From the IMG/VR virus record IMGVR_UViG_3300027710_000011, positions 1 through 64,000 of that record: DNA of 64,000 bases; one strand, 5' to 3'. The notes under the pieces are model-generated. The model did not search any database, was not told where the DNA came from, and saw only the letters and a program-made list of their open reading frames with translations. The position numbers and the translations under genes were made by a program. The number at the start of each line of letters is the position of its first letter. Positions within the stretch are counted from its first letter, which is position 1. Of the stretch, positions 1-52,018 are shown piece after piece.

Positions 1-1112
1 CCGACACCGGCTTCACCGTTGACATCGACGCTGCCTTCAAGGGTCGTGTCTCCGCTGCTGAATCCGGCCTCGCTGCCGAAATCACCCGCGCCACCGCTGC
101 CGAAGGCGTCATCGACGGCAAGGTCGCCGCCGAAGTTACTCGTGCCACTGGTGCCGAGAACGTTCTGACCGCCGCCATCGCGACCGAAAAGTCGCGTGCT
201 GAAGGTGTCGAAGCAACTCTGACTACTGGCCTGGCCAGCGAAGTCAGCCGCGCCACGACCGCCGAAGGCGTGCTGGACGGCAAGATTGCCACCGAGAAGA
301 CCCGTGCCGAAGGCATTGAAGCCGGTCTGCAGTCCGCTCTGGATGCTGAAGTTGTTCGCGCAACCGCAGCCGAAGGCGTGCTCACGACTGCTGTCGCAAC
401 CGAAAAGACTCGCGCTGAAGGCGTCGAGGCTGGTCTGCGCACTGACCTGACTGCCGAGACCGCTCGTGCGACTGCCGCCGAAGGCGTGCTGACCACCGAC
501 TTGGCTGCTGAAGTTGCTCGTGCAACTGCTGCCGAAGGCGTGATCGATGGCAAGGTGACTGCTGAAGTCACCCGTGCCACGGCCGCTGAAGGTGTCCTGA
601 CTACTGCCATCGCTACGGAAAAGACCCGTGCCGAAGGCATTGAAGCCGGCCTGCGTACGGACCTGACCGCTGAAGCTGCTCGCGCCGCTGCTGCTGAAGG
701 TGTCCTGACGACTGACCTGGCTGCTGAAGTCAGCCGCGCGACTGCTGCTGAAGGTGTGTTGTCTGGCAAGGTGGGTAACCTCTCCAGCCTGACCACATCC
801 GCCAAGACCGACCTGGTCTCGGCCATCAACCAAGTTGCAGCTGCCGCCGGCACTGGTACTGGCGCCCTGAAGGATGCCATCAACGCTCAGCGCTTCACCT
901 ACACGGCTGCTGCTGCTGCTTTGACGCACGTCATCAACCACAACCTGAACACCGGCTTCGCCGCTGTGCAAGTGTTGACCAAGGGTGATGATGGTCTGTT
1001 CCGCAACGACATCGTCGCCGTGGAAGAAACCAGCGCCAACGCCATCACCATCACGCTGACCGAAGCGCGCATCGTGAAGGTCGCGATCCAGGCTCTGGAC
1101 GCTTTGGCCTAA
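1..1112 (+). CDS. 5'-truncated coiled-coil tail/fibre-associated protein with AEVxRATAAEGVL repeats
   Basis: The frame is open from position 3 to the stop at 1112. It carries tandem helical repeats (AEVARATAAEGVLTT, TEKTRAEGIEAGL), then GNLSSLTTSAKTDLVSAIN and a C-terminal HVINHNLNT...VQV beta domain. Confidence 0.75.
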   Translation, partial: DTGFTVDIDAAFKGRVSAAESGLAAEITRATAAEGVIDGKVAAEVTRATGAENVLTAAIATEKSRAEGVEATLTTGLASEVSRATTAEGVLDGKIATEKTRAEGIEAGLQSALDAEVVRATAAEGVLTTAVATEKTRAEGVEAGLRTDLTAETARATAAEGVLTTDLAAEVARATAAEGVIDGKVTAEVTRATAAEGVLTTAIATEKTRAEGIEAGLRTDLTAEAARAAAAEGVLTTDLAAEVSRATAAEGVLSGKVGNLSSLTTSAKTDLVSAINQVAAAAGTGTGALKDAINAQRFTYTAAAAALTHVINHNLNTGFAAVQVLTKGDDGLFRNDIVAVEETSANAITITLTEARIVKVAIQALDALA

Positions 1113-1600: not shown

Positions 1601-2149
1601 TTGTCAGCATCAATCGTTCGCAATTACACAGACATGGAGCTGCGTGGCTCCCTCATCCACGGTAAGGAGCTGTCGGATTTTCCGGCTACCCCTCGTCGTA
1701 ATGAGCAGGTCCTCATCAACGGGGTTCTCTGGGTCTACACGATGGTCGCTGGGTCTCTGACCTGGTTCCCACTCAACACCAAGAAAAACACCCACACTCA
1801 TACCCAAGCCCTGGCCTCCCAGGACTGGACCGTCCAGCACGGTATGAATACCCAGGACTTCGTTCTCGGCGTCTACGGCCCCGACAACAACCTGGTGATG
1901 CCTTCCAGCATCCAACAAGTCACCGACAATAGCTTCCACATCACGTTCACTGAACCTGTCGCTGGCCGCGCTGTCGCCTTCTTCAATACCGCAGCATTTG
2001 CGCCTACAGTGGTCACGCAGTCTGTCACCGCCAATTCGTTGAATATCTCGAATGGCTTGGTCACTGCAGATCAAACTGGGCTCAAGGTCAACGGCAATCA
2101 AGTTCCAGTCTTGAATGCTGAAGGCCATATGGACTACGGTACTCTCTAA
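1601..2149 (+). CDS. tail fibre adapter/structural protein
   Basis: TTG start with AGGAG SD. The HTHTQALASQDWTVQHGM domain resembles the C-terminal domain of the 1-1112 protein. Confidence 0.7.
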   Translation: MSASIVRNYTDMELRGSLIHGKELSDFPATPRRNEQVLINGVLWVYTMVAGSLTWFPLNTKKNTHTHTQALASQDWTVQHGMNTQDFVLGVYGPDNNLVMPSSIQQVTDNSFHITFTEPVAGRAVAFFNTAAFAPTVVTQSVTANSLNISNGLVTADQTGLKVNGNQVPVLNAEGHMDYGTL

Positions 2150-2176
2150 CACCTTCTGAGCAGGAAAGAAAACGAG

Positions 2177-5100
2177 ATGCATACCCCATTGATCCCTCCC
2201 CGCGGCGGCGCTTCTACCGTCGCGTCTTACGTTGGTCCTGCTGGCTCCATCGTCGTCAACACTGACGCAAAAACAATCCACGTCCATGACGGCGTGACCG
2301 CTGGCGGCTTTGCTTTGTCCAAGGTTGGCCACCAGCACACGCTGAACGAAATCACCGCAGCTTTGGGTTTCACGCCTGCTGCTTTGAACGTCAGTGGTCA
2401 AGTCTCCGTTGCTCAACTGGGTACCGGCACTGCAAATGCGACTAAGGTCCTGTTTGGTGACGGCACTTGGAAAGACGCTCCCACCGGCGGTGGTGGCGGC
2501 TCGAGCAATAGCTTGTCTGGCACTGGCACTGTTTCGCCTTCTACTTCGGTGTCCGGCGTTTACGCTGGTGTTACGGCCGGTGTTGGTGAGATGTATCTGG
2601 TCAACGCTGGCGCAGGTTCCAACGAAAAGGCTATTCAGTTCGCCCAGCGCGCTGATGGTGTTTTCCAGATCAATCTGTACAACGACGCTCTCAACAGCAA
2701 TCCCACGTTCTTCTCGCTGGATCGCACCGGCGCAGTTCCTAACATCGCTACGTTCAATGTGAACTCGATGGTGGTGAACGGCGTTCTTAGCGCCAATTCT
2801 TTCGCCGGCGTGGGCACGGCTCTGACAGCGCTGAACGCTTCGAACCTCGCTTCTGGCACAGTGCCTGTTGCGCGATTGGGTAGCGGTACCGCAAGTGCCA
2901 GTACCTACCTCCGTGGCGACGGTACTTGGGACGCTATCAGTGCAGGCGGCTCCGTTGAAGCTGGGAGCATTCTTCCAGCTGCCGGCACCAGCTCTGTCAC
3001 ACTGACTACTGGTAACCAGATTGGTGCCAACACCAGTGCTGACGTCACTATCGGCTCCGGTTCGTCGGCCAACGGCCTGACTGGTGCAGTCACGATTACT
3101 TCCGGCGGTACCGGTTCACTTGGTTCCGGTAACGTGACCTTGAAATCGGGTCAGACTGGTTCTGGCTACGGCTCGGGCGAAGTGATCATCGGCACCGGTG
3201 CGACCAGTGGTAATTCGGGAACACCTGCTGTTTCTGGCGCTATCACGATTGCTACTGGTGGTTGGACTGGTACGGGTACGAATCAGTCGTCGGGCAGCAT
3301 CACGCTGCAAACCGGAACGAAAGCAGGTTCCGGTGTTGGTGGTGACATCAATCTGACAACCGGTACTGGCGGCGAGATTGTGATGACTTCTTCTGTCATC
3401 ACAACAACCGGCAACCTCGGAGTTGGTGGCTTTGGTGGTAACGGTGCCACGCCTGGTCGAATCTTCGCTGCTTCCGGCGGTATCCAGGTTGATCAAACAT
3501 CCTTGGTACCCTCGAATTCGTTGGGCGGTAGCTTCCGTATCGGTTATCTGAATTCTGCGATCAGCGGAACATCGGATGGCTTCCTGACCTGGATGGGCGC
3601 GGCAGCAACGCTGAATGTGTCCGGTGCCAATGGCTCTGTTCTGCTGGCATCGCGTTCTGATTCCGGCACAGCCGGCGTCAGCGTTGCGACAAACAACACG
3701 GCTCGCCTGTTCATTGCTGGCAATGGCGCGTGGGGTTTGTCTGGCGCTAACTACGGCACAGCTGGTCAAGTGTTGACATCGAGCGGCTCGGGCTCTGCAC
3801 CGACCTGGACGTCGCCTGCTGTTGACACCTTGAACGCCACCGGTCCTCGTGGCTTCAACATCGCGACTGCTGCGGTGACTGCCGGTACTTCGAATGACGG
3901 AACTTATCAGATTCCTTGCATTGGTTTGACTGCGCCTAACGCGCCGTTGAACGAAAAAGTTTGGCAATTCAGCGCAAGTAGCGGTGGTGGTTTTGAACTC
4001 GGCGGTTACAACGACGCGTTGCAGGGTGGCTCGTATAGCGCTTATATCACTATCGGTCGCAATGCCGTCGCAGCAAATACCATGCAGTTCAATGCGGCAG
4101 CGATCACATTGAACGGTGCGGTGACCGGTACGTCGTTTGCAGGTTCTGGCGCTGGCTTGACTGCGCTGAATGCTTCGAACTTCAGCACAGGCGTCATGGC
4201 CACCGCTCGTCTGGGTTCCGGTACAGCTGACGCATCGACGTACTTGCGTGGTGACGGCACGTGGGCGGCAGTTTCGGCTGGCGCATCTACGTCGTTGAGC
4301 GCTACAGCGACATCGCCTGCACCTAGCGGTACTTCTGGTACGACGGGCGTGTACGCATCGTCTGTTGGCGGTCAGCCGACGTTCTGGTTCACCAACTCCA
4401 CAGCGGCTGCCAACACCAAGACATCCGTTATTGACCAGACATCCGGCGGCTTGTTGCGGTTCAATTTCACAAATGACTTGTGGAATACAGCAACGGCATG
4501 GCTGTCGGCACAGCGTGTCAGTGGTTCGAACGTTGCGTCTGCTGTCAAGCTGGATGCGAATTCTGTCAATCTGGCAGGTTTGTCTACGGGTCTGCAGCTG
4601 AACGGCTCTGCCGGTACAGCTGGTCAAGTGTTGACTTCGCAAGGCGCCAGCGCTGCTCCTATCTGGACGTCCGCCAGCGTTACGGCTTTGAACGGCACGG
4701 GTACCTTCACACCATCGACTACGACGACAGGTGTTTTTGCTGGCGCAGCCGGCGCTGAGTCACGCATTGTGTTCTCGGCATCTGGAGCCACTGCTGGTAA
4801 CAAACTGTCAATTTTGGCTGGACATTCAGGCGGCTTCCAAGCTAGCTTTGTCAACGACACGTACGATAGTCAAACAGTCTGGTTGCAGGTTGCTCGTTCT
4901 GGTAATACAGCTACGAACATCACGCTCACAGGCACAGCCATCACGCTGAACGCTGCTGTGACTGGCACGTCGTTTGCAGGTACACACACTGGTGTTGGTA
5001 CTGGCTTGACTGCACTGAATGCTTCGAACCTGGCTTCTGGCACGGTGGCAACTGCTCGCCTGGGTACAGGTACTGCCGATAACAGTACCTACCTCCGTGG

Positions 5101-6577
5101 CGACGGTACCTGGGCAGCGGCTGTGGCTACGTCGAGCACATCGTTGAACGGCACTGCTGCACCGAGCGCTCGTTCGTCCAGCACAAGCGGTGTGTTTGCC
5201 GGTACCATCGGTTATCCGTTGATCACGATGACTGCGTCTGGCGCAGGCGCGAATGCTAAGAGTGCCCAGATTTATCTGGACTCCACTACTGGTGCTTTCG
5301 GCATGTCGTTCTTGCCGGACGGCTTGGCTTCGCAAAATCTGTTCTTCACCGCATCGCGCAACGGCGCAACTGCCGCAACGATCACCTTGACTTCTACAGC
5401 CATGAATTTGGCTGTTGGCACTGGTGGTCTGCAGCTGAACGGCTCTGCCGGCACAGCTGGTCAAGTGTTGACTTCCAATGGTCCTAGCGCCGCCCCTACG
5501 TGGGCTGCTCCTGCTCCAGCTGTCTTGGCTGCCACTGGCAACTACGCGACAGTTCTGACCTCGGGCGTCTACGCTGGTTTGCGCACTAACGCTCCTGCTC
5601 TTCAGTTGGTGAATACCAGCTGTGCAACCGATGCGGAAGTGACATCGCTTGTGCACGACAATGACGGCGTTGTTCGTCTGCGTCTGTGGGCCAACAACTT
5701 CGCATCGAACAACTACGCGTTCGAAGTGGTGCGTAACGGCGCAGCAGTGCCGTCGATGTTCAAGTTGTATGGCACCGCCATCAATTTGGCTGTTGGCACT
5801 GGTGGTCTGCAGCTGAATGGCGTTGCTGGCACAGCTGGTCAAGTCCTGATGTCTGGCGGCGCTGGCGTTGCTCCGACATGGTCGAGCACGTATGCAGGTC
5901 AGATGACATTCTCTGCTGGCATCACATGCTCGTCTGTGACTGCAATGGAAGTCGCTGGCGCCTCTGGCGCTCTGCAGCTCGGTTACCTGAATGCAGCAGT
6001 GACTTCGGTGCAAGATGCATTTGTGGCTTGGGGTGGTACTTCCAGTACTCTGGTGTCCGGCGTCACAGGTGCCAGCTCCAACGGTACTCTGGTGCTGTCT
6101 TCGCGTAACACATCCAACGCGGGTGTCACTATCGCGACTAACAATACTGTTCGACTGGTCACTCAGTTCAACGGTACGGTTCGTCCTGGTGCTGATGCGA
6201 CGCAGGACTTCGGCGCTACGACCTTCCGCTGGAACAACGGCTACTTCGGTGCCCTGTTCACAACAGCCGGTACCGTCAGCGTCTCGGATGAGCGTCTGAA
6301 GACCGACATCTTCGATCTGGAAGATGCTGAAGTGCGCGTGGCCCAGCAACTCAAGCAGTTGCTGAAGAAGTATCGTCTGAAGTCGGAAGTTGCGGCTCAA
6401 GGCGCGAAGGCCAAGTGGCACGTTGGCATCATTGCGCAAGCAGTGGTCAAGGCATTCGCAGATGAAGGTCTGGATGCTCACGACTACGCGATGCTCAGCC
6501 TGACTGATGTTGATGGTGTTGATCAATACGGCGTGAACTACGACGAATTGCTCGCATTCATCATCGCTGCTCTGTGA
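2177..6577 (+). CDS. long tail fibre (Mtd_N-like N-terminus, internal repeats, C-terminal peptidase S74 chaperone)
   Basis: N-terminal RGG...GPAGSIVVNTDAKTIHVHDGVTAGG, a G/S/T-rich body and C-terminal SDERLKTDI...GIIAQ...YGVNYDEL. Confidence 0.88.
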   Translation: MHTPLIPPRGGASTVASYVGPAGSIVVNTDAKTIHVHDGVTAGGFALSKVGHQHTLNEITAALGFTPAALNVSGQVSVAQLGTGTANATKVLFGDGTWKDAPTGGGGGSSNSLSGTGTVSPSTSVSGVYAGVTAGVGEMYLVNAGAGSNEKAIQFAQRADGVFQINLYNDALNSNPTFFSLDRTGAVPNIATFNVNSMVVNGVLSANSFAGVGTALTALNASNLASGTVPVARLGSGTASASTYLRGDGTWDAISAGGSVEAGSILPAAGTSSVTLTTGNQIGANTSADVTIGSGSSANGLTGAVTITSGGTGSLGSGNVTLKSGQTGSGYGSGEVIIGTGATSGNSGTPAVSGAITIATGGWTGTGTNQSSGSITLQTGTKAGSGVGGDINLTTGTGGEIVMTSSVITTTGNLGVGGFGGNGATPGRIFAASGGIQVDQTSLVPSNSLGGSFRIGYLNSAISGTSDGFLTWMGAAATLNVSGANGSVLLASRSDSGTAGVSVATNNTARLFIAGNGAWGLSGANYGTAGQVLTSSGSGSAPTWTSPAVDTLNATGPRGFNIATAAVTAGTSNDGTYQIPCIGLTAPNAPLNEKVWQFSASSGGGFELGGYNDALQGGSYSAYITIGRNAVAANTMQFNAAAITLNGAVTGTSFAGSGAGLTALNASNFSTGVMATARLGSGTADASTYLRGDGTWAAVSAGASTSLSATATSPAPSGTSGTTGVYASSVGGQPTFWFTNSTAAANTKTSVIDQTSGGLLRFNFTNDLWNTATAWLSAQRVSGSNVASAVKLDANSVNLAGLSTGLQLNGSAGTAGQVLTSQGASAAPIWTSASVTALNGTGTFTPSTTTTGVFAGAAGAESRIVFSASGATAGNKLSILAGHSGGFQASFVNDTYDSQTVWLQVARSGNTATNITLTGTAITLNAAVTGTSFAGTHTGVGTGLTALNASNLASGTVATARLGTGTADNSTYLRGDGTWAAAVATSSTSLNGTAAPSARSSSTSGVFAGTIGYPLITMTASGAGANAKSAQIYLDSTTGAFGMSFLPDGLASQNLFFTASRNGATAATITLTSTAMNLAVGTGGLQLNGSAGTAGQVLTSNGPSAAPTWAAPAPAVLAATGNYATVLTSGVYAGLRTNAPALQLVNTSCATDAEVTSLVHDNDGVVRLRLWANNFASNNYAFEVVRNGAAVPSMFKLYGTAINLAVGTGGLQLNGVAGTAGQVLMSGGAGVAPTWSSTYAGQMTFSAGITCSSVTAMEVAGASGALQLGYLNAAVTSVQDAFVAWGGTSSTLVSGVTGASSNGTLVLSSRNTSNAGVTIATNNTVRLVTQFNGTVRPGADATQDFGATTFRWNNGYFGALFTTAGTVSVSDERLKTDIFDLEDAEVRVAQQLKQLLKKYRLKSEVAAQGAKAKWHVGIIAQAVVKAFADEGLDAHDYAMLSLTDVDGVDQYGVNYDELLAFIIAAL

Positions 6578-42756: not shown

Positions 42757-42795
42757 TGTTCACCCAAGCAAGCCCGAAGGCTTGTGCTGGATTAC

Positions 42796-44949
42796 TTAGA
42801 TGACGTGATTGTGGATCGCGACCTTCTTGTCGATCACATCTTCCCAGCCCTTGATCGTGATCACGGCCATGATAGGCATGTTCGTGATGTGACGGAAGGC
42901 CGGTTGCACGGTCAGTTCCTTGCTGTTCGCACCGTTGCGGTGGATCGGCAGAGCCAACACCAGCTCAGGCTGATAAGCCATGTTGCCGAAGTTCAGCACG
43001 TTCGGGACGCCTTCCGAAGCATTGGGAGCCTTCAGAGTCATCACGATCTTGCCGTTCATCAGCTTGTTGGGAGTGGAAACCACTTCCAACGACATGCCTT
43101 CACCCAGAGTGCGCATGTCGCCAGTGACCATCAGCCAGCCTTCGGTCACTTGGTCGGTACCGGCCAAGACGATCGGGTCCACGTCGTTGCCGCCGTTCAG
43201 AGCAGCAGCGGCTTGACGCCAGCCGGAGTCACGCACCATGCGATACGACATTTCGCGCATCTTGTTGGTGATGGCTTGCTGGATGTCTTCAGCCAGGTTG
43301 TGCGACTGGATGTTGTTGACGATGGTGCCCAGATCCAGCTCGAACTCTTCGTAGAACGGAGTGATCAAGTGACGCGACACGCCCAGGATGTCCAGGGTAT
43401 CGCCGATCAGGCCTTGCGAACCAACGTAGCGGCTCAGCACGTCCTTGACGCGCAGCAGCTCGTCCACGGCGCCGTTGCTGGCGCGGATGCGAGTGGTGGT
43501 GATCAGAGCGTTCAGGTCGCTGGTGTCGGTGTCATCGCCTTGGCCCAGAGGACGGGGAGCGGTGATAGGCGACAGCAGAGGCACCGAGTAGCACTGGTTG
43601 TACACCGTGATGTCCAGCAGGTCGCCACGCTGACGACGGTTGCTGTTGGTACGACGAGCGTCGATGTTGTAGCCGATCAGCTTGGCGTCGACGAAGGCAG
43701 CGAAGATGGCCTGGATGCCAGCCGGATTGGACGCACCGGGAACGTACTTCACGCCGTTCTGGGTCACCGAAGTCACGGTCACTTCACCAGCCAACAGATT
43801 CATGGTGCCGGTCTGCAGATCCAGCGAACCCGAAACCATGAAGCCCAGACGCACTTCCACGCCGGGAACCACGCCAGCCAGTTCGCCCGGCTTGGCGCCG
43901 TCGATAGCCAGGGTGCTCGAAGTCACCATCACCGACTTGTTTTCGAAGTTCAGGGTGACGCGCTTTTCCGAACCTTGCGGGTTGTAGACGAAGTTCGAAG
44001 TGAACAGGTCCTTGGTCGGGAAGTAGATCACGTCGCCAGTTGCGTCCTTCAGTTGCAAGTAGGCGCCGGCCAGGTGCACGTCACGGTCCACAGCGTCGGT
44101 CGAGTCCATCAGGCCAGATTGCACCAGCGAGTCGACTTGCGACAGGCCGATCAGGCTCATCTGCTGGCCGAACTTCAGAGCGCCGGTGACCACGGCTTCG
44201 CCGTTCTGGTCCACGGTGCTGTGCGGGATGATGGCGCTGTCGACGAACTTGTTGGCAGCTTCGTTGCGGAACACCGGGATGATCGTGGTCTGGTTGTTGC
44301 GCAGGATGTCGGGATCGCGCAGAGCGAACACGATGTTGCGACGCTTGAAGTCGTTCACGTCGCCGGAGGTGGCGCGACGCACTTCGTCCATGACGCTGAT
44401 CAGTTGGATCGAGATCAAGTAGCCGACCTGGTCACGAGTCACCACCACGGTGGGGTAGAAGGCTTCGCCGAACTTGTCTTGCTGAGCCGCTTGCATGTTG
44501 TACGTCACTGTGTACGCAGACATGTTGCGGTTCGATGCGTCGTCGTAGGCTTCCATGGCGGTAGCCAGGCGCTCGACGCCGCCAGCAGCAGCGATCATCA
44601 CGTTGTTGCCATCTTGCGGCAGGCTCGGAGCCTTGCCACCCAGGTAGCTCTTGCCAGCTTGAGCGATCATGGCGGCGCCCAGAGCGGCGTCACGACGAGC
44701 GGGAGTCAGCTTGCCCAGGCCGGAGTCGTTGGCGTAGCCTTCCAGAGCAACACGCAGACGATCCAAGCCGCCGCCGAAGGACTCTTGTTCGGAGTCGTTC
44801 ATGCTTTCCAGAGCGATGCCGGAGCGCACGCCAGCGATCAACGAGGTGCCGCCGTTGGACTGCGCTTCGTTCTTGACAGCGTTCAGGAGACCAGACAGAC
44901 CAGTAGCCGGGATGCGACCAGCCAGGAGACGTTGAACTGCATTTTTCAT
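42796..44949 (-). CDS. major capsid protein (phiKZ gp120-like)
   Basis: YNMQAAQQDKFGEAFYPTV, ARRTNSNRRQRG and KELTVQP motifs; propeptide with ALE/ALE/AME sites; strong codon bias. Start placed at ATG 44949. Confidence 0.88.
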   Translation of the reverse strand: MKNAVQRLLAGRIPATGLSGLLNAVKNEAQSNGGTSLIAGVRSGIALESMNDSEQESFGGGLDRLRVALEGYANDSGLGKLTPARRDAALGAAMIAQAGKSYLGGKAPSLPQDGNNVMIAAAGGVERLATAMEAYDDASNRNMSAYTVTYNMQAAQQDKFGEAFYPTVVVTRDQVGYLISIQLISVMDEVRRATSGDVNDFKRRNIVFALRDPDILRNNQTTIIPVFRNEAANKFVDSAIIPHSTVDQNGEAVVTGALKFGQQMSLIGLSQVDSLVQSGLMDSTDAVDRDVHLAGAYLQLKDATGDVIYFPTKDLFTSNFVYNPQGSEKRVTLNFENKSVMVTSSTLAIDGAKPGELAGVVPGVEVRLGFMVSGSLDLQTGTMNLLAGEVTVTSVTQNGVKYVPGASNPAGIQAIFAAFVDAKLIGYNIDARRTNSNRRQRGDLLDITVYNQCYSVPLLSPITAPRPLGQGDDTDTSDLNALITTTRIRASNGAVDELLRVKDVLSRYVGSQGLIGDTLDILGVSRHLITPFYEEFELDLGTIVNNIQSHNLAEDIQQAITNKMREMSYRMVRDSGWRQAAAALNGGNDVDPIVLAGTDQVTEGWLMVTGDMRTLGEGMSLEVVSTPNKLMNGKIVMTLKAPNASEGVPNVLNFGNMAYQPELVLALPIHRNGANSKELTVQPAFRHITNMPIMAVITIKGWEDVIDKKVAIHNHVI

Positions 44950-44999
44950 GATTTGGTTTTCCGTAGAAGAAAGAGAAAAGAATGACAATCGGAATTGGT

Positions 45000-45611
45000 T
45001 TAGGCCACCGCTACCTTACGGCGCAGAAGCGTTCGAAGATACAAGCCATAAACGAAGCTCTCGGCGACCTTCGTTGGTTGCTCATAAACATATAGCTGTT
45101 TCACGATCTCGCGAACCAGCTGATATTCTAATTCACGCACGTCACTCACCTTGGCGATGGTGTTGTACAGAATCACTCCGACGGCTTGATCTCGCAATGC
45201 GACGACTTCAAAGCCGCGAGCAGGATCAGACTTGGAGATAGACACATCCGTTTGGCTTGATGCGTCTTCAGAATATAGGCGTCTTTTCAGTTCATCAAAC
45301 GCTTCAGGTTGCAAGGCCAACTTGCTTTCCAAAGTATTGGTGACTGCAATTGATTCTTGGGTGTTGTTGTCCGTGAACCACCAACTACCAAAGATGTTGT
45401 CGCTCTTGTGCTGACGAGAAGGGAAGAGATCCAATCCCAATTTGTGAATGCACAAAAGATCCGTCAGGTCGTTCTGAGACAGAACTTGGCTGGCCTTCTG
45501 GTAATCCAGAAGATCACACATCTTCATGTTCTTGCGACGGATCGTACTTGCCACCCAATAAGGGATGGCGTAAATGCGCCGACGCATCGGAAAAAGCAGT
45601 TTCATTTCCAT
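45000..45611 (-). CDS. conserved hypothetical protein upstream of major capsid gene
   Basis: 203-aa ORF between the capsid and DnaB genes, as in phiKZ-like phages. Confidence 0.68.
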   Translation of the reverse strand: MEMKLLFPMRRRIYAIPYWVASTIRRKNMKMCDLLDYQKASQVLSQNDLTDLLCIHKLGLDLFPSRQHKSDNIFGSWWFTDNNTQESIAVTNTLESKLALQPEAFDELKRRLYSEDASSQTDVSISKSDPARGFEVVALRDQAVGVILYNTIAKVSDVRELEYQLVREIVKQLYVYEQPTKVAESFVYGLYLRTLLRRKVAVA

Positions 45612-45738: not shown

Positions 45739-47280
45739 ATGGACAAAAAAATACTTCTCATTAAGGGTGTTACGCTGTTGTTTCGTGAGAGTCAAATTCC
45801 GAACAACGCTGACAACTCAGCGGCGCTGGTTAAAACACTCTTGGAGGGCGTAACGCTCCCAGACGTAAGTGTTGGTGCCATTGACACCGAACGAGAGATC
45901 CTAGGGGCTCTCAAGCAGATTTGTCTTGAGATGTGTGGACAATCGCCTACACATCAATACGTTGCAGTTGAACTGCTACAAAAGATTCACCACGCCACAC
46001 GGCATGACGAAACTCTATACCATACGTTTCGTGAAGGTATCGAAACTCAGTTGTCAGAAGATGAGCTCAAACGCTTTTGTCTGAATCTGGAAGCTGACGT
46101 TAACGAACATGTCCGTGAAGAAAAGATCAGTAAGCTGATTCTTGATGCAGGAATGCAGCTCAAGTTCAAGCGCGATACCGTTGGCAATATGCAAAGCTTT
46201 GCTGCCGACATCGTTCAAAAGCTTGAGCCTTATAGCGTCAGTGCAAGTAAGGAAGATCCTGGTGTTGTTGGTACGGTTGACTTCGGCAACCGTGAACAGA
46301 TGAACCAGATGATCGAAGAGGGTAAGACCCTGAACAGTTCTGAAGGTATTCTTCGTTTGGGTTGGCAAGGTGTCAACCGAATGACTGAAGGTGGTCTGCG
46401 CCGCGGCGAGTTCGTCACAGTGGCGGCCTTGCAACATAACTTCAAGACCGGTTTCTCTATAAATCTGTTCGAGCATATTGCGATGTATAACACACCGCAC
46501 ATGATCAACGTAATGAAGCGTCCGTTGTTGCTTCGGATCACGTTTGAAGATCCGTTGTCTACCAACATGACTTACATGTATCGCAACATCTACGAGAACA
46601 AAACTCGTCAGATGGCCGACGTGATGGGTACACCGACTGCGGAAATGACAGAGTACGTTTATAACGCTCTGACTGCAACGGGTTATGAGATCATGATGAT
46701 GCACGTTAATCCGTCCGAGTGGACGTATCGACACATCACAAACAAGGTCTTGGAACTTGAAGCCCAGGGCTATGAGATCCATGTTCTGGCATTGGACTAT
46801 CTGGCCATGGTTCCTACAACAGGTTGCCGTGTGACCGGTCCTACTGGTTCAGACATCCGAGATATGTTCCGTCGTATGCGTAACTTCTGTGGTCCTCGCA
46901 AGATCACCTGCATCACGCCTCACCAGTTGTCGACTGAAGCCAAGAAGTTGACACGGATGGGTAACGAAGAGAACTTCGTCAAGGACGTGGCTAACAAGGG
47001 TTACTACGATAGCTGTTCTACCATTGACCAAGAGATCGATCTGGAACTCTACATCCACATCGTGAAGGCCGATGGTGCATCCTACTTGACAGTACAGCGC
47101 GGTAAGCACCGTGGCTTCAACCGTACGCCTGAAGCTCACAAGTTCTGCGTGTTGAAGTTTGAAGACGTTGGCGACATCATCCATGACGTTGACGGTGTTG
47201 ATCTGACTCGCAAGCGTCCAGGCGGTGGGCCAATGGGTAGTCCGGATGAGAAACCTCATTGGGACTTTTCCATCGATTAA
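45739..47280 (+). CDS. dnaB: DnaB-like replicative helicase (phiKZ gp118-like)
   Basis: GLRRGE...ALQHNFKTG (variant Walker A), ITFED, LDYL, TPHQLS and QRGKHR. Confidence 0.88.
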   Translation: MDKKILLIKGVTLLFRESQIPNNADNSAALVKTLLEGVTLPDVSVGAIDTEREILGALKQICLEMCGQSPTHQYVAVELLQKIHHATRHDETLYHTFREGIETQLSEDELKRFCLNLEADVNEHVREEKISKLILDAGMQLKFKRDTVGNMQSFAADIVQKLEPYSVSASKEDPGVVGTVDFGNREQMNQMIEEGKTLNSSEGILRLGWQGVNRMTEGGLRRGEFVTVAALQHNFKTGFSINLFEHIAMYNTPHMINVMKRPLLLRITFEDPLSTNMTYMYRNIYENKTRQMADVMGTPTAEMTEYVYNALTATGYEIMMMHVNPSEWTYRHITNKVLELEAQGYEIHVLALDYLAMVPTTGCRVTGPTGSDIRDMFRRMRNFCGPRKITCITPHQLSTEAKKLTRMGNEENFVKDVANKGYYDSCSTIDQEIDLELYIHIVKADGASYLTVQRGKHRGFNRTPEAHKFCVLKFEDVGDIIHDVDGVDLTRKRPGGGPMGSPDEKPHWDFSID

Positions 47281-49033: not shown

Positions 49034-50209
49034 TTACTTGTTCAGCTTGTCCAGGATCAGGACGAGAGTCTTGGTGAGACTCTTGTTCGTTTCCAGGAGT
49101 TCAGCGTTAACCTTGCGGGTTTCACGAACTTCACGTTGCACAGCTTGGTTGAAACTGTGAACGGTTTCCAATTTCTGGTGGAGTTCGCGATTGTCAACGA
49201 CAAGTGCTTCGATCATTTCAGTCAGGTGATCAACACGACCTTCGTTGTGATCACCTTGGCTTTCGATCTCTTGCAACTGACGCTGAGTGTCACGATTTCC
49301 GACCGCGATCGCATCCAACACTTGCGAGTGAAGGCTGTATGCGTTATCACGCGGCGCACGGTCATGGTTAGTGCCGTACTGATTGGTAGGCTTTTCGGCC
49401 TTGTTCTTCTTTACTTCTTTTTCTTTGACCTCAACCTTAGGTTTGGTCTTGGTCTTGGTTTCAGGCTGAGGTTCGGGCACCACGTCGTAAACAAGCGGAC
49501 CGCCAATGTCGGCCAGCTTGAGAACCAACTCAGCACTCATCTGTCCAACCAGACGATACTTCATCACCGCCTTTTCGCCTTCGATCTGATACGAGATAGA
49601 GATCAGCCCACTGACAATGGGGCCGGTCGCTTTCTTCGCATTCGTGATCAAACGGCTGCCGACAGAGATGTAACGCAGGCCCTTGGTCAGGAGCGTTGTC
49701 ACATCGCCAACTTGTGCGATGTAGTCGCGCAGTTTGGCCAAGTTCTTCATATCGCCTTCATCGCGAATCGCAGTATTGTCACCGACGGAGTCAAGAACGG
49801 TGAGGAATTCGTGCGTTTCTTCGGCGAGCAGCTCGATCACTGCTTTGGTTTCTTCGACACCGATAGGGGAACCGGAAGTGAAGTTGCCGTGTTTATGAAG
49901 CCAGTCGCTGCCTTCATTAGCGATGTAGAACTCATAGGTGTCATCGTTATTTGCACGACGATTGACAACAAGGTTCAAGCTTTCATGAGACGTAAAAGCT
50001 TTGTGGGTCGGATTGGTGGGTGCCTGAGATTCGGGTTGCTCAATCACCGGGTCGGCAGCGTCAGCGACCGCGTCGTCGCTGTTGCTTGCTTGCTGGGTGG
50101 ATGCATCAGCGACAGCTTCGGCTGGAGGCGCAATGAGTTCCGGGGTAGGAACTTGTTGTGCTTCAGCTTCGATGACAGCAGCTGCGCTTTGAGTGTTCAG
50201 ATCGTACAT
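49034..50209 (-). CDS. hypothetical protein (acidic disordered N-terminus, Lys-rich linker, C-terminal coiled coil)
   Basis: GGAG SD; 391-aa ORF. Confidence 0.75.
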   Translation of the reverse strand: MYDLNTQSAAAVIEAEAQQVPTPELIAPPAEAVADASTQQASNSDDAVADAADPVIEQPESQAPTNPTHKAFTSHESLNLVVNRRANNDDTYEFYIANEGSDWLHKHGNFTSGSPIGVEETKAVIELLAEETHEFLTVLDSVGDNTAIRDEGDMKNLAKLRDYIAQVGDVTTLLTKGLRYISVGSRLITNAKKATGPIVSGLISISYQIEGEKAVMKYRLVGQMSAELVLKLADIGGPLVYDVVPEPQPETKTKTKPKVEVKEKEVKKNKAEKPTNQYGTNHDRAPRDNAYSLHSQVLDAIAVGNRDTQRQLQEIESQGDHNEGRVDHLTEMIEALVVDNRELHQKLETVHSFNQAVQREVRETRKVNAELLETNKSLTKTLVLILDKLNK

Positions 50210-50430
50210 TCTAGTGACTCCGTTAAAATCGTATTTGTTGTTCTATTACAAATACGTCTTGTTTACCAAAGCTCGTGGGTTGTTCACAAACTTTGATCCC
50301 CTTTTTACGTGCGAATACTTACTACTGTATCTGACGTAATTCTCTTTACATTGCCTTTCGCATACTTTTTTGAGCACGCTCAGACATAGGACTTTACAAG
50401 CTGGTATTTTTTACCATCTTTCAAGGGACA

Positions 50431-51380
50431 GCATAAGGGGAGTAGGAGGCGCCCAGCCTCCTACTCCCGATAGCCGGGTCATCGCTGACCCTAAGTGTGG
50501 GTGAGCTAGGGTGGTCAACCAAAAAACCACCGTAACTCACGCCCCTTCCACACTCCTCACAATGCTGTCTGCTCCGACATTTCTATCAGGCACTGGGTCA
50601 GCTCCCCAGCTCATTGTAAGATCAGATTCGCCGAACCTGACTTTCGCTCTTGTTGAGGCTACTCCAGAACTCACCTCAGTTTAATGCTCCGCCATCTGGA
50701 TTGAGCATTTTTCTCTTACCGTATTGCGTGTACGAACCGAACAAACTCCTACAATACAATACGTGAGAAAACGGCGCACCAATGACTTCAGCGAGTCTAG
50801 TGCGCCTTCATTGAAGACGTATACTGGGGGTAGCCCAGCACACGTCGTCAACGTATGAACAGCATAGACAACGAACACTCAACTCCCCGAAAGGAGTCGA
50901 GCATTCGCTTCTATACTGTTTAATGATAATCCTAGGTCACCATCCAAGTCGCCAAGCCGTTGCGTACAGCCTGGTTTGAGCGCCCTCCACAAGAGCCAGT
51001 GTTGCTGGCAATCATGCTTTCAGGTGACTAAGGGCTATCATCGTCTAGTCCTCCGCGCTTCACAGATCTTGGGATTGTTAAGCCCGCTTTCGGGGGCGCC
51101 CTTAATCTCCACGCGATGGCGCTATCTTTCAGATAACTTGCTAGTTAAGATGTCACCTTAACTAACCTGATGCGGCATGGGTTGACAACCCACCCTAGAG
51201 CCAACTTTCGTCGGCCCCATTCAACTATCATGTGTTTACGCTTTCGCGCTATGATAGTGCCTAAGGCATCACTCTTGGCCACTGATGAATTACTCCAAGC
51301 CGGAGCCTATTCCATCAGGTGATCTTCTTCACACGATCGTCTTGCACGTAAAAACTTGCATTACAACCAGCGATTCCACG
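50431..51380 (-). ncRNA. putative ~950-nt highly structured large non-coding RNA
   Basis: Largest gene-free gap in the window. It has a promoter motif at 51384-51408, a terminator at 50432-50468, and more than 15 helices with GAAA/GCGA/UUCG loops and G-U pairs that form only on the minus strand. Confidence 0.8.
50432..50468 (-). terminator. terminator of the large ncRNA
   Basis: Minus strand GGGAGTAGGAGGC-TGGGC-GCCTCCTACTCCC-CTTATGC; same hairpin+TTATG type as the other terminators. Confidence 0.75.
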
Positions 51381-51383
51381 TTT

Positions 51384-51408
51384 GTGATATGTGGCTGTGC
51401 AAATCTAG
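51384..51408 (-). promoter_or_regulatory. early-type promoter motif driving the large ncRNA
   Basis: Minus strand CTAG-N12-ACATATCAC; the core is identical to the 42666 and 62835 copies. Confidence 0.7.
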
Positions 51409-51409
51409 A

Positions 51410-52018
51410 TTACAGCTCAAGCCACTTCTGCAGCTGATGCAATTGATATTCAGCAATTGCATCAATGTGCTCACCTTGTAATCTTTGCGCCACAATCTGT
51501 TCTGGACCAGCCATATCCAATAACCGGACAACGCTGATATAGAAGTAACTACCAAAACTCTTGCGCTGCGCTTCAGAGAAGTGACCTGATATCAACAAGA
51601 CCGCCTTGGTGTTCTTGTCGTAGAAACAACCTTCCCACAACGGAATGTCTTCCGATTCAGGAGATATGTTGTAATTGAACCACGCAGTAGCAACGTTATC
51701 GTTCTCTACGTGGATTCCTAATGAATTGTGGAATGATTCAAATAAAACCACTCCCACCCGTTGTTCATTTTGACAAGTAAGCAGGTCGTTATGACAAGTA
51801 AACAAATATTTAGTTACATCCTGAATCGCGTCTTCTCGCATCTCCGCTATAAAAACTTGTTTGTGCACGATCTGTAGTTTTGCCTTTCTGTTCTTATCAC
51901 AGCCCATTGAACGAGCTTCTTGCTTGAAGACGTCAGTCACAATGTCTTCAAGCATACTGCTAATGACTTGGCGTAATTTGCGATGTTGTATTCTGAACAT
52001 CTCTTTAAGAATTGTCAT
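51410..52018 (-). CDS. hypothetical protein (202 aa)
   Basis: AAGGAG SD; ORF track. Confidence 0.72.
   Translation of the reverse strand: MTILKEMFRIQHRKLRQVISSMLEDIVTDVFKQEARSMGCDKNRKAKLQIVHKQVFIAEMREDAIQDVTKYLFTCHNDLLTCQNEQRVGVVLFESFHNSLGIHVENDNVATAWFNYNISPESEDIPLWEGCFYDKNTKAVLLISGHFSEAQRKSFGSYFYISVVRLLDMAGPEQIVAQRLQGEHIDAIAEYQLHQLQKWLEL

What the first reader, a model, noticed from the sequence alone, without database searches (positions are those of the whole stretch)
50654..50709. Kissing-loop (pseudoknot) candidate inside the large RNA
Seen: two adjacent minus-strand hairpins, AAUGCUC-[AAUCCAGAUGGCG]-GAGCAUU and UGAGG-[UGAGUUCUGGAGUAG]-CCUCA, carry exactly complementary loop hexamers, UCCAGA (50695-50700) and UCUGGA (50663-50668). 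Inference: a loop-loop tertiary contact, either within one molecule or between copies. This would indicate a compact 3D fold or multimerisation rather than a chain of independent hairpins.
Basis: partly seen in the sequence, partly recalled or inferred. Interest (0 to 1): 0.6.

Follow-up and report, generated by a model that had tools for sequence, protein, structure and literature searches.

The report
Conserved complementary loops in phage RNA
Two neighbouring hairpins in a previously undescribed ~950-base structured RNA of an uncultivated jumbo phage carry exactly complementary six-base loop sequences that stay unchanged in five diverged phage lineages, so a loop-loop "kissing" contact is plausible but still unproven.

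Summary
On the minus strand, hairpin 1 (50709-50683) and hairpin 2 (50678-50654) carry UCCAGA (50700-50695) and UCUGGA (50668-50663) in 13-nt loops.

They lie in the 3' core of a ~950-nt non-coding RNA. It is bounded by the phage's own promoter motif (ACATATCAC, 51392-51384) and terminator type (hairpin plus TTATGCNGTC, 50468-50427). The host genome is a 276.8-kb phiKZ/RP12-like jumbo phage. The fold z-score is -19.8, and no Rfam family matches.

I recovered homologues from four further lineages through the downstream 391-aa gene. RNA core identity falls to 59% and the neighbouring protein to 28%. Even so, both hexamers are invariant, and hairpin 2's loop lies in the longest invariant run of the core. 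The outer stem pairs change compensatorily (U-A/U-G/C-G; A-U to G-C). The 3' half of loop 1 varies while its hexamer does not.

Chance complementarity of this loop pair is about 1%, or about 9% for any two of the six conserved islands. Because neither loop varies, covariation, the decisive test, could not be applied.

Verdict: a credible kissing-loop candidate (about 0.5). Whether the contact is within or between molecules is unresolved. The main rival is that the loops are conserved as protein- or trans-binding sites.

The parts
50683..50709 (-). Hairpin 1. Stem AAUGCUC/GAGCAUU, 13-nt loop AAUCCAGAUGGCG (50702-50690).
   Evidence: Sequence. It is in the consensus fold. The core 5 bp are invariant and the 6th pair changes A-U to G-C in L109.
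50695..50700 (-). Loop 1 hexamer UCCAGA.
   Evidence: Coordinates. Invariant in 5 lineages, within the 14-nt invariant run UGCUCAAUCCAGAU.
50679..50682 (-). A-rich linker between the hairpins (AAAC; 4-6 nt in the homologues).
50654..50678 (-). Hairpin 2. Stem UGAGGU/GCCUCA, 13-nt loop GAGUUCUGGAGUA (50672-50660).
   Evidence: The outer pair is U-A, U-G or C-G in different lineages. The closing pair is U-G, U-A or U.C. The core 4 bp are invariant.
50663..50668 (-). Loop 2 hexamer UCUGGA.
   Evidence: Coordinates. Invariant in 5 lineages, inside the longest invariant run of the core (18 nt, 50677-50660).
51384..51392 (-). Phage promoter-type motif ACATATCAC in front of the RNA.
   Evidence: There are 17 copies in the genome, all on the minus strand, none on the plus strand, against about 1 expected. 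Conservation with L102 and L106 begins here. The motif fits the ~10-nt early (virion RNAP) motif class described in PMC7598289.
50427..51383 (-). Body of the ~950-nt structured non-coding RNA. The exact 5' and 3' ends are inferred, not mapped.
   Evidence: MFE -427 kcal/mol, z = -19.8. It sits in the largest ORF-free gap of the genome. No conserved ORF. No Rfam family. Between two lineages, 379 consensus pairs include 13 double-compensatory changes.
50427..50468 (-). Terminator-type element: 13-bp GC-rich hairpin (50468-50438) followed by UUAUGCUGUC (50436-50427).
   Evidence: The same hairpin-plus-TTATGCNGTC arrangement occurs 10 times in the genome; 9 have a stable hairpin directly before the motif and 8 lie at gene ends or in front of promoter motifs. 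The stem covaries heavily in the homologues.
50210..50426 (-). Conserved leader between the terminator and the start codon of the 391-aa gene.
   Evidence: 91% identical to L102, falling to 37-62% in the more distant lineages.
49034..50209 (-). Co-occurring 391-aa gene: acidic tail, unknown globular domain, Lys-rich linker, C-terminal coiled coil.
   Evidence: Homologues at 83-28% identity were found. In the three contigs read far enough upstream (L102/103/104 type, L106), a ~1.2-kb gap aligns along its whole length, and the shorter upstream stretches of L107, L109 and L110 align with the 3' core. Two contigs seen only as gene tables have gaps of ~1.2 kb and ~0.8 kb. The model shows no fold match beyond the coiled coil.

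Best explanation
The two hairpins are conserved elements of the 3' core of a discrete ~950-nt non-coding RNA. The RNA is made from a phage-specific, probably early (virion-RNA-polymerase) promoter of an uncultivated phiKZ/RP12-like jumbo phage.

Their 13-nt loops present UCCAGA and UCUGGA, which pair to form a 6-bp loop-loop (kissing) helix. The pair is heterotypic, meaning each hexamer matches the other perfectly but matches itself at only 4 of 6 positions. The same contact can therefore be made in two ways. It can form inside one molecule, as a bridge across two side-by-side stems of equal height. Or it can form between copies, loop 1 of one chain with loop 2 of the next, giving a symmetric dimer or a head-to-tail ring.

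Shown: the hairpins, the complementarity, the invariance of the hexamers and the transcript-unit signals. Inferred: that the loops actually pair, and the geometry. A coaxial kissing stack of about 19 bp cannot be closed by the 4-6-nt linker. An intramolecular contact would therefore have to be strongly bent, whereas a reciprocal dimer fits without strain.
For: Exact 6-nt complementarity in the loops of adjacent hairpins; shuffle probability 0.009 for this pair and 0.016 for any adjacent pair.

Both hexamers are invariant in 5 lineages whose RNA core is 92, 75, 67 and 59% identical to the window and whose neighbouring protein is 63, 42, 33 and 28% identical. Hairpin 2's loop lies in the longest invariant run of the core and hairpin 1's in the third longest, against a background of 42% invariant columns.

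The 3' part of loop 1 varies (GGCG to ACCUG) while the hexamer does not, as expected if that part is a spacer. The stems are kept by pair-preserving changes.

These are the only large loops in an RNA otherwise capped by 3-6-nt loops, including several GAAA tetraloops. The duplex energy of the two loops is -8.9 kcal/mol.

There is precedent. In GOLLD, ROOL and OLE, conserved loops without covariation (GOLLD L21b, ROOL L18) proved to be intermolecular kissing loops in cryo-EM (bioRxiv 10.1101/2024.12.08.627333).
Against: No covariation: every candidate kissing pair is invariant, which says nothing for or against pairing.

With the look-elsewhere correction the complementarity is only marginal. 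The probability is 0.086 among the six invariant islands and 0.20 among all loops. A longer 7-nt complement elsewhere in the same RNA is not kept intact in L106.

The loop nucleotides flanking the hexamer in loop 2 (GAGU and GUA) are also invariant, so something beyond a 6-bp helix constrains that loop.

Only 5 lineages were available. All were found through the same neighbouring gene, and L107, L109 and L110 are truncated contigs. There are no probing or structural data.
Confidence: 0.5

Rival explanations
1. Each loop is conserved because it is a binding site for a protein, and the complementarity is incidental. Candidates are the co-occurring Lys-rich coiled-coil 391-aa protein or a host factor. 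Both hexamers fit one half-palindromic word, UCYRGA, which a dimeric protein could read twice.
For: The whole of loop 2 (13 nt) and 9 nt of loop 1 are invariant, more than a 6-bp helix needs. UCCAGA and UCUGGA share 4 of 6 positions. The RNA lies upstream of the 391-aa gene in every lineage recovered, and that protein has a basic linker and an oligomerising coiled coil.
Against: UCYRGA occurs only at these two loops in the RNA, so there is no wider motif family. The protein shows no recognisable RNA-binding fold. The linkage of RNA and gene is biased by the way the homologues were found. Protein binding and kissing do not exclude each other.
Confidence: 0.25
2. The loops pair with other partners. 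One option is another segment of the same RNA, for example loop 1's 3' half GAUGGCG with CGCCAUC at 51121-51115. Another is a phage or host RNA in trans.
For: There is a 7-nt perfect complement between loop 1 (50696-50690) and 51121-51115. Loop 2 contains a Shine-Dalgarno-like GGAG.
Against: In L106 the loop keeps GAUGGCG, but the aligned 5'-domain segment reads GGUAUCA, which weakens the helix to 3 bp plus a wobble. In L109 the loop part changes, but its 5' domain could not be retrieved. Two mutually complementary loops cannot both target one single-stranded partner. No trans target was identified.
Confidence: 0.1
3. The hexamers form an ordinary helix in an alternative secondary structure that replaces both hairpins, making a conformational switch.
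For: In L109 the local minimum-energy fold pairs UCCAGAUACCU with AGGUGAGUUCUGGA instead of forming the two hairpins. RNAalifold on five sequences also offers UGCUC pairing with a downstream GAGCR.
Against: In four of five lineages the two-hairpin fold is the local optimum, at about -16 to -17 kcal/mol. The possible GCU/AGC extension of the alternative helix is broken in L102, L106 and L107, where the third base varies G/A/C. The alternative UGCUC/GAGCR helix is broken (C.A) in L107 and L109.
Confidence: 0.08
4. The complementarity has no structural meaning, and the loops are conserved for unrelated or DNA-level reasons.
For: The look-elsewhere-corrected probability is only 0.09-0.2.
Against: The hexamers sit in the two large apical loops of adjacent hairpins, and both are among the most conserved islands of an RNA under clear structural selection. 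A DNA-level operator is unlikely, because the stems evolve by RNA-type G-U intermediates.
Confidence: 0.07

Closest known systems
Quaternary and tertiary kissing loops of the large ornate RNAs GOLLD, ROOL and OLE (Kretsch et al., bioRxiv 10.1101/2024.12.08.627333)
   Same: They are large (0.6-0.8 kb), hairpin-rich, GNRA-rich non-coding RNAs (my own knowledge: GOLLD and ROOL are often phage- or prophage-borne). Conserved apical loops form 4-7-bp kissing helices that fix the fold or join copies into dimers and cages. Some of those loops are invariant, so covariation was impossible there too.
   Different: There is no sequence or covariance-model similarity. The pair here is heterotypic, between two neighbouring hairpins; the symmetric kissing loops named in the passages read (OLE L9.3, GOLLD L21a and L21b, ROOL L18) pair a loop with its own copy in another chain. 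No structure or oligomer has been shown here. The host is a phiKZ-like jumbo phage with its own RNA polymerases.
Classical hairpin kissing complexes: HIV-1 DIS, ColE1 RNAI/RNAII, TAR/TAR* (own knowledge)
   Same: Six to seven Watson-Crick pairs form between apical loops. Purines flank the pairing hexamer (AA before UCCAGA).
   Different: Those loops are 6-9 nt and the partners are separate molecules. Here the loops are 13 nt and the hairpins are tethered by 4-6 nt.
Side-by-side loop-loop contacts of adjacent helices in riboswitches: purine L2-L3, lysine L2-L3 (own knowledge)
   Same: Two neighbouring hairpins of similar height are joined at their tips to lock a parallel arrangement.
   Different: The riboswitch contacts use few Watson-Crick pairs plus non-canonical layers and sit on a ligand-binding junction. 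Nothing of that kind is seen here.
Syntenic structured gaps of Ralstonia phages RP12 and FLC1-1B and IMG/VR locus L006
   Same: They occupy the same genomic neighbourhood, downstream of the DnaB-like helicase and ahead of a block of small genes. They have a similar length (0.7-0.9 kb), no ORF, and z-scores of -5.8 (FLC1-1B) and -6.5 (RP12); L006 was not folded.
   Different: They are not alignable with the window's RNA. No counterpart of the two hairpins was identified.

Membership tests
Kissing-loop (loop-loop) interaction | Two stable hairpins whose stems are supported in homologues | tested here: met
   Consensus folds and per-lineage pairs. The cores are invariant and the outer pairs change U-A/U-G/C-G and A-U to G-C. 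The support is modest because few stem positions vary.
Kissing-loop (loop-loop) interaction | At least 5-6 contiguous Watson-Crick complementary bases located in the two loops | tested here: met
   UCCAGA 50700-50695 and UCUGGA 50668-50663; shuffle probability 0.009 for this pair.
Kissing-loop (loop-loop) interaction | Complementarity maintained across homologues | tested here: met
   Both hexamers are identical in own, L102, L106, L107 and L109/L110, with core identity down to 59%.
Kissing-loop (loop-loop) interaction | Compensatory (covarying) changes between the loops | tested here: inconclusive
   No substitution occurs in either hexamer in any lineage, so there is nothing to score. Scans for further lineages were blank or returned only chance matches.
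Kissing-loop (loop-loop) interaction | Physical evidence of pairing (probing, mutate-and-rescue, structure) | not testable with these tools
   No RNA 3D or pseudoknot predictor and no probing data were available.
Rfam large RNAs (GOLLD, ROOL, OLE, HEARO, group I/II introns and others) | Match to the family covariance model | tested here: not met
   No family reached the gathering score in the window. Nothing relevant appeared at E up to 10 in 49800-51800. Nothing matched the homologous RNAs.
Independent non-coding transcript unit of the phage | Own promoter and terminator of the types used elsewhere in the genome, and no conserved ORF | tested here: met
   Promoter motif, 17 copies all on the minus strand. 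Terminator type, 10 copies. ORFs differ in frame between lineages. The transcript ends themselves were not mapped.
Homo-oligomeric 'ornate' RNA assembly (ROOL/GOLLD-like) | Demonstrated multimer or symmetric intermolecular contacts | not testable with these tools
   There is only a geometric argument: a 4-6-nt linker against a coaxial stack of about 19 bp.

The most novel reading that the evidence does not exclude
The RNA is the founding member of a new class of ~1-kb ornate RNAs of uncultivated phiKZ/RP12-like jumbo phages. It would be transcribed early by the virion RNA polymerase. It would homo-oligomerise through the heterotypic H1:H2' kissing contact into a dimer, ring or cage, possibly together with the co-occurring Lys-rich coiled-coil protein. 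That would extend the ROOL/GOLLD type of RNA quaternary structure to jumbo phages that carry their own RNA polymerases.
Probability: 0.2. Interest if true: 0.85.

Novelty: new variant of a known kind. Interest (0 to 1): 0.6.

Why it matters
Large ornate bacterial and phage RNAs (GOLLD, ROOL, OLE) were recently shown to build protein-free dimers and cages through kissing loops, yet their functions remain unknown. Here a different, unannotated ~950-nt RNA has an equally extreme predicted structure. It sits in a jumbo phage with its own RNA polymerases, carries that phage's own promoter and terminator signals, and is far better conserved than its neighbouring genes.

The conserved complementary loop pair gives a concrete hypothesis that two mutations can test, whether it governs folding or self-assembly of the RNA. 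The fixed neighbouring gene offers a candidate protein partner. A 2026 review of jumbo phage biology mentions non-coding RNAs only in passing (PMC13282480), so the RNA itself appears to be new.

Tried and rejected
Searches for homologues that gave nothing:
- Rfam at the gathering score and at E up to 10.
- blastn of the RNA against GenBank phages, and tblastn of the 391-aa protein against the same.
- Flanking proteins and the helicase as single queries in IMG/VR.
- 80 IMG/VR loci fetched with a helicase alignment. None holds the RNA by blastn, single-sequence nhmmer or profile nhmmer. Five whole related genomes searched by DNA gave only short chance matches; one of them led to the promoter motif.
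- Pattern scans. The hairpin-1 19-mer found nothing in IMG/VR. In JGI metagenomes it found six matches, all chance hits in unrelated high-GC coding DNA. The U-rich hairpin island found nothing in IMG/VR or in GTDB genomes. The hairpin-2 18-mer found nothing in IMG/VR (one search failed), and the combined H1..H2 pattern found nothing in GTDB genomes.
- The 202-aa upstream gene has no relatives. Its other contigs are identical in the RNA.

Contigs I could not read: the P0006 lineage (SRR20217178), a second P0007 contig (ERZ27279563) and P0011 (ERZ27297709) returned 'no DNA'. No longer contig exists for the L109 lineage (one search failed).

The difference table was truncated, so I did not use it for covariation. 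Short contigs of the RNA in two RNA-type libraries do not prove transcription.

Ideas rejected:
- A hidden ORF: the frames differ between lineages.
- An extended single hairpin using GCU/AGC: broken in three lineages.
- A UCYRGA motif family: only the two copies exist.

Structure prediction of the 391-aa protein gave a confident but unmatched globular domain plus a generic coiled coil.

I did not build a covariance model. Every candidate kissing pair is invariant, so a formal pair count could add nothing.

Full report
**1. The observation**

Read on the minus strand, window 50709-50654 is AAUGCUC AAUCCAGAUGGCG GAGCAUU AAAC UGAGG UGAGUUCUGGAGUAG CCUCA. UCCAGA lies at 50700-50695 and UCUGGA at 50668-50663.

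**2. The setting**

- The window is the first 64 kb of a 276,772-bp IMG/VR virus record.
- Its DnaB-like helicase is closest to Ralstonia phages RP12 and RP31, at 53% identity. A phiKZ-type major head protein and an RNA-polymerase-type subunit lie nearby. It is therefore an uncultivated phiKZ/RP12-like jumbo phage.
- The hairpins sit in the largest ORF-free gap of the whole genome, 50210-51409.
- On the minus strand this gap folds to -427 kcal/mol. Twenty dinucleotide shuffles averaged -326 kcal/mol with a standard deviation of 5, which gives z = -19.8.
- The fold is a chain of about 25 hairpins. Most are capped by 3-6-nt loops, including several GAAA tetraloops.
- No Rfam family matches, either at the gathering score or at E up to 10.

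**3. A discrete transcript unit**

The motif ACATATCAC at 51392-51384, preceded by a T-rich stretch, occurs 17 times in the genome. All copies are on the minus strand and none on the plus strand, against about 1 expected. Most stand in front of genes. This fits the ~10-nt conserved motif class that marks the early, virion-RNA-polymerase promoters of jumbo phages (PMC7598289). The timing is inferred, not measured.

At the other end is a 13-bp GC-rich hairpin (50468-50438) followed by UUAUGCUGUC (50436-50427). The same hairpin-plus-TTATGCNGTC arrangement occurs 10 times in the genome. Nine copies have a stable hairpin directly before the motif, and eight lie at gene ends or directly in front of promoter motifs.

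The RNA therefore runs from about 51384 to about 50427, roughly 950 nt. The exact ends are unmapped.

**4. Homologues**

Direct routes failed, as listed under Tried and rejected. Public-run screening showed that parts of the RNA occur in about 20 runs from 15 studies, covering sediment, freshwater, wastewater, pond and drinking water. One sediment run holds a ~93% relative and a much more distant one.

The gene directly downstream encodes a 391-aa protein (49034-50209, minus strand), and it opened the way to homologues. A word search and then a full HMMER search found relatives at 83, 63, 42, 36, 33, 30 and 28% identity. What lies upstream of these genes:
- L102/L103/L104 (63% protein) and L106 (42% protein) were read far enough upstream to show the whole RNA.
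- L107 (33% protein) and L109/L110 (28% protein) are truncated, but their shorter upstream stretches align with the 3' core.
- L108 and L111 reach only 165 and 405 nt upstream, short of the hairpins.
- Two contigs seen only as gene tables have gaps of about 1.2 kb and about 0.8 kb.

That gives five lineages including the window. One bias must be stated: all were found through the same gene, so the RNA-gene linkage cannot be judged independently.

**5. The RNA is under structural selection**

- Against L102, the 3' core is 92% identical and the whole RNA 87%. The protein next door is only 63% identical, and the flanking DNA averages about 84%.
- Conservation begins exactly at the promoter motif.
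- RNAalifold on the two sequences gives 379 pairs. None is broken, 13 show double compensatory changes and about 30 show pair-preserving single changes. A consensus fold avoids broken pairs by construction, so the compensatory changes are the informative part.
- Three hairpin tips are replaced wholesale.
- Short ORFs differ in frame between lineages, so the region is not coding.
- Core identity to the window is 92, 75, 67 and 59% for L102, L106, L107 and L109.

**6. The two hairpins in five lineages**

| Element | What is invariant | What varies |
|---|---|---|
| Hairpin 1 stem | core CG-UA-CG-GC-UA | 6th pair A-U to G-C in L109; 7th pair kept in three lineages |
| Hairpin 2 stem | core GC-GC-AU-GC | outer pair U-A, then U-G, then C-G; closing pair U-G, U-A or U.C |
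| Linker | A-rich | length 4-6 nt |
| Loop 2 | GAGUUCUGGAGUA, all 13 nt | nothing |
| Loop 1 | AAUCCAGAU | remainder GGCG becomes ACCUG in L109/L110 |

The change in loop 1's remainder also abolishes the CC/GG pairing inside the loop that single-sequence folding had suggested.

Over 413 aligned core columns, 42% are invariant. The longest invariant run (18 nt) is GAGGUGAGUUCUGGAGUA. A 14-nt run is UGCUCAAUCCAGAU. The two hexamers therefore lie in two of the six most conserved islands of the RNA. In loop 1, selection visibly falls on the hexamer side of the loop and not on the rest.

**7. Is the complementarity more than chance?**

| Comparison | Probability of a complement of at least 6 nt |
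|---|---|
| This loop pair | 0.009 |
| Any adjacent hairpin pair | 0.016 |
| Any loop pair in the RNA | 0.20 |
| Any two of the six invariant islands | 0.086 |

The estimates come from shuffling the loop or island sequences. One warning applies. Loop 1's 3' half, GAUGGCG, has a 7-nt perfect complement at 51121-51115. That match is degraded in L106 while the loop is unchanged. Taken together, the signal is suggestive but not decisive on statistics alone.

**8. What could not be tested**

Neither hexamer varies, so there is no covariation to count. A pair that never varies says nothing for or against pairing. Further scans for additional lineages were blank or returned only chance matches. Three relevant contigs could not be read.

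**9. Mechanism**

My best reading, at about 0.5, is a 6-bp loop-loop helix. Its duplex energy is -8.9 kcal/mol.

The following geometry is inference from standard A-form dimensions.
- A coaxial stack of H1, the kissing helix and H2 is 7+6+6 bp, about 50 A long. A 4-6-nt linker cannot close that distance.
- An intramolecular contact would therefore need the two stems, which are nearly equal in height, to stand side by side. The loop-loop helix would then bridge their tips. The seven spare nucleotides in each loop make this possible.
- A reciprocal dimer (H1 of chain A with H2 of chain B, and the reverse) or a head-to-tail ring needs no strain.
- The pair is heterotypic: each hexamer matches itself at only 4 of 6 positions. 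This favours defined H1:H2 contacts over self-pairing.

There is precedent in GOLLD, ROOL and OLE. There, conserved loops proved to be intermolecular bridges, including loops that could not be tested by covariation.

**10. Rivals**

- Protein-binding sites (0.25). The invariance extends beyond the hexamers, both hexamers fit UCYRGA, and a Lys-rich coiled-coil protein is encoded next door. However, the word occurs only twice in the RNA, and the protein has no recognisable RNA-binding fold.
- Other cis or trans partners (0.1).
- An alternative-fold switch (0.08). Its extensions are not conserved.
- Meaningless complementarity (0.07).

**11. Comparison with known systems, and novelty**

The motif type, a kissing loop, is well known. 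The RNA that carries it matches no curated family and has no counterpart in GenBank phages. It is not described in the literature I could search: a 2026 review of jumbo phage biology mentions only that phiKZ expresses non-coding RNAs.

I file it as a new variant of the 'large ornate phage RNA with conserved loop-loop contacts' kind. It works like, but is not a member of, GOLLD, ROOL or OLE.
Noticed in passing
L002:17829-18767 (-), L003:18110-18930 (-), L006:17944-18680 (-); L004:17070-18055 (-): The nearest cultured relatives (Ralstonia phages RP12 and FLC1-1B) and two IMG/VR relatives also have an ORF-free gap of 0.7-1 kb in the same neighbourhood. The three gaps folded (RP12, FLC1-1B, L004) gave z-scores of -6.5, -5.8 and -4.4. 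The RP12, FLC1-1B and L006 gaps align with each other (nhmmer E 1e-34 to 1e-39) but not with the window's RNA. This may be a class of jumbo-phage RNAs that is conserved in position but divergent in sequence.
   Followed up: partly
window 42674, 51392, 62843 (-), and 14 more in G000 (for example 84814, 186467, 191625, 201880, 254204): The promoter-type motif ACATATCAC, with a T-rich upstream stretch, occurs 17 times, always on the minus strand. Several copies precede stretches with no obvious start codon nearby, so further non-coding transcripts may exist.
   Followed up: partly
window 26994, 48946 (+), 50436, 62868 (-), and six more in G000: A genome-wide terminator-type signal: a GC-rich hairpin immediately followed by TTATGCNGTC. 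It occurs 10 times on both strands, and nine copies have a stable hairpin directly before the motif. It is often followed about 20 nt later by the promoter motif, forming a terminator-promoter cassette.
   Followed up: partly
window 50690-50696 and 51115-51121 (-): There is a 7-nt perfect complement between loop 1's 3' half (GAUGGCG) and CGCCAUC in the 5' domain. It is weakened in L106, where the partner reads GGUAUCA. L109's changed loop (GAUACC) would match a GGUAUC partner, but the 5' domain of that lineage could not be retrieved.
   Followed up: partly
window 49034-50209 (-): The 391-aa protein downstream of the RNA in the lineages read has four parts: an acidic disordered N-terminus (~70 aa), a confidently modelled globular domain (~75-245) with no match in Pfam, PHROGs or the PDB, a Lys-rich linker, and a ~70-aa C-terminal coiled coil. 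It is a candidate partner of the RNA.
   Followed up: partly
L102:8478-8763 (-): In the L102 lineage the DnaB-like helicase gene is interrupted by a group I intron (Rfam RF00028, 84 bits). Next to it is an ORF with a weak HNH_3 hit. The window's helicase (45739-47280) is uninterrupted.
   Followed up: no
window 51410-52018 (-): The 202-aa gene directly upstream of the RNA has no relative in 5.8 billion proteins. It is absent from the L102 lineage, where a terminator hairpin takes its place. L106 has a 200-aa gene at that position, which I did not compare.
   Followed up: partly
window 1-1000, 2000-6000, 43000-45000: Patches of 57-63% GC stand out against about 48% elsewhere. They include the major head protein gene (42796-44988), which also shows a full-length antisense shadow ORF (42784-44985, +).
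   Followed up: no
window 51016-51303: In a sediment metatranscriptome and in wastewater 'RNA-Seq' libraries, the only contigs laid on the 2-kb stretch fall in the RNA's 5' domain (99% identical). None falls on the flanking genes. This is compatible with an abundant stable RNA but is not proof of transcription.
   Followed up: no
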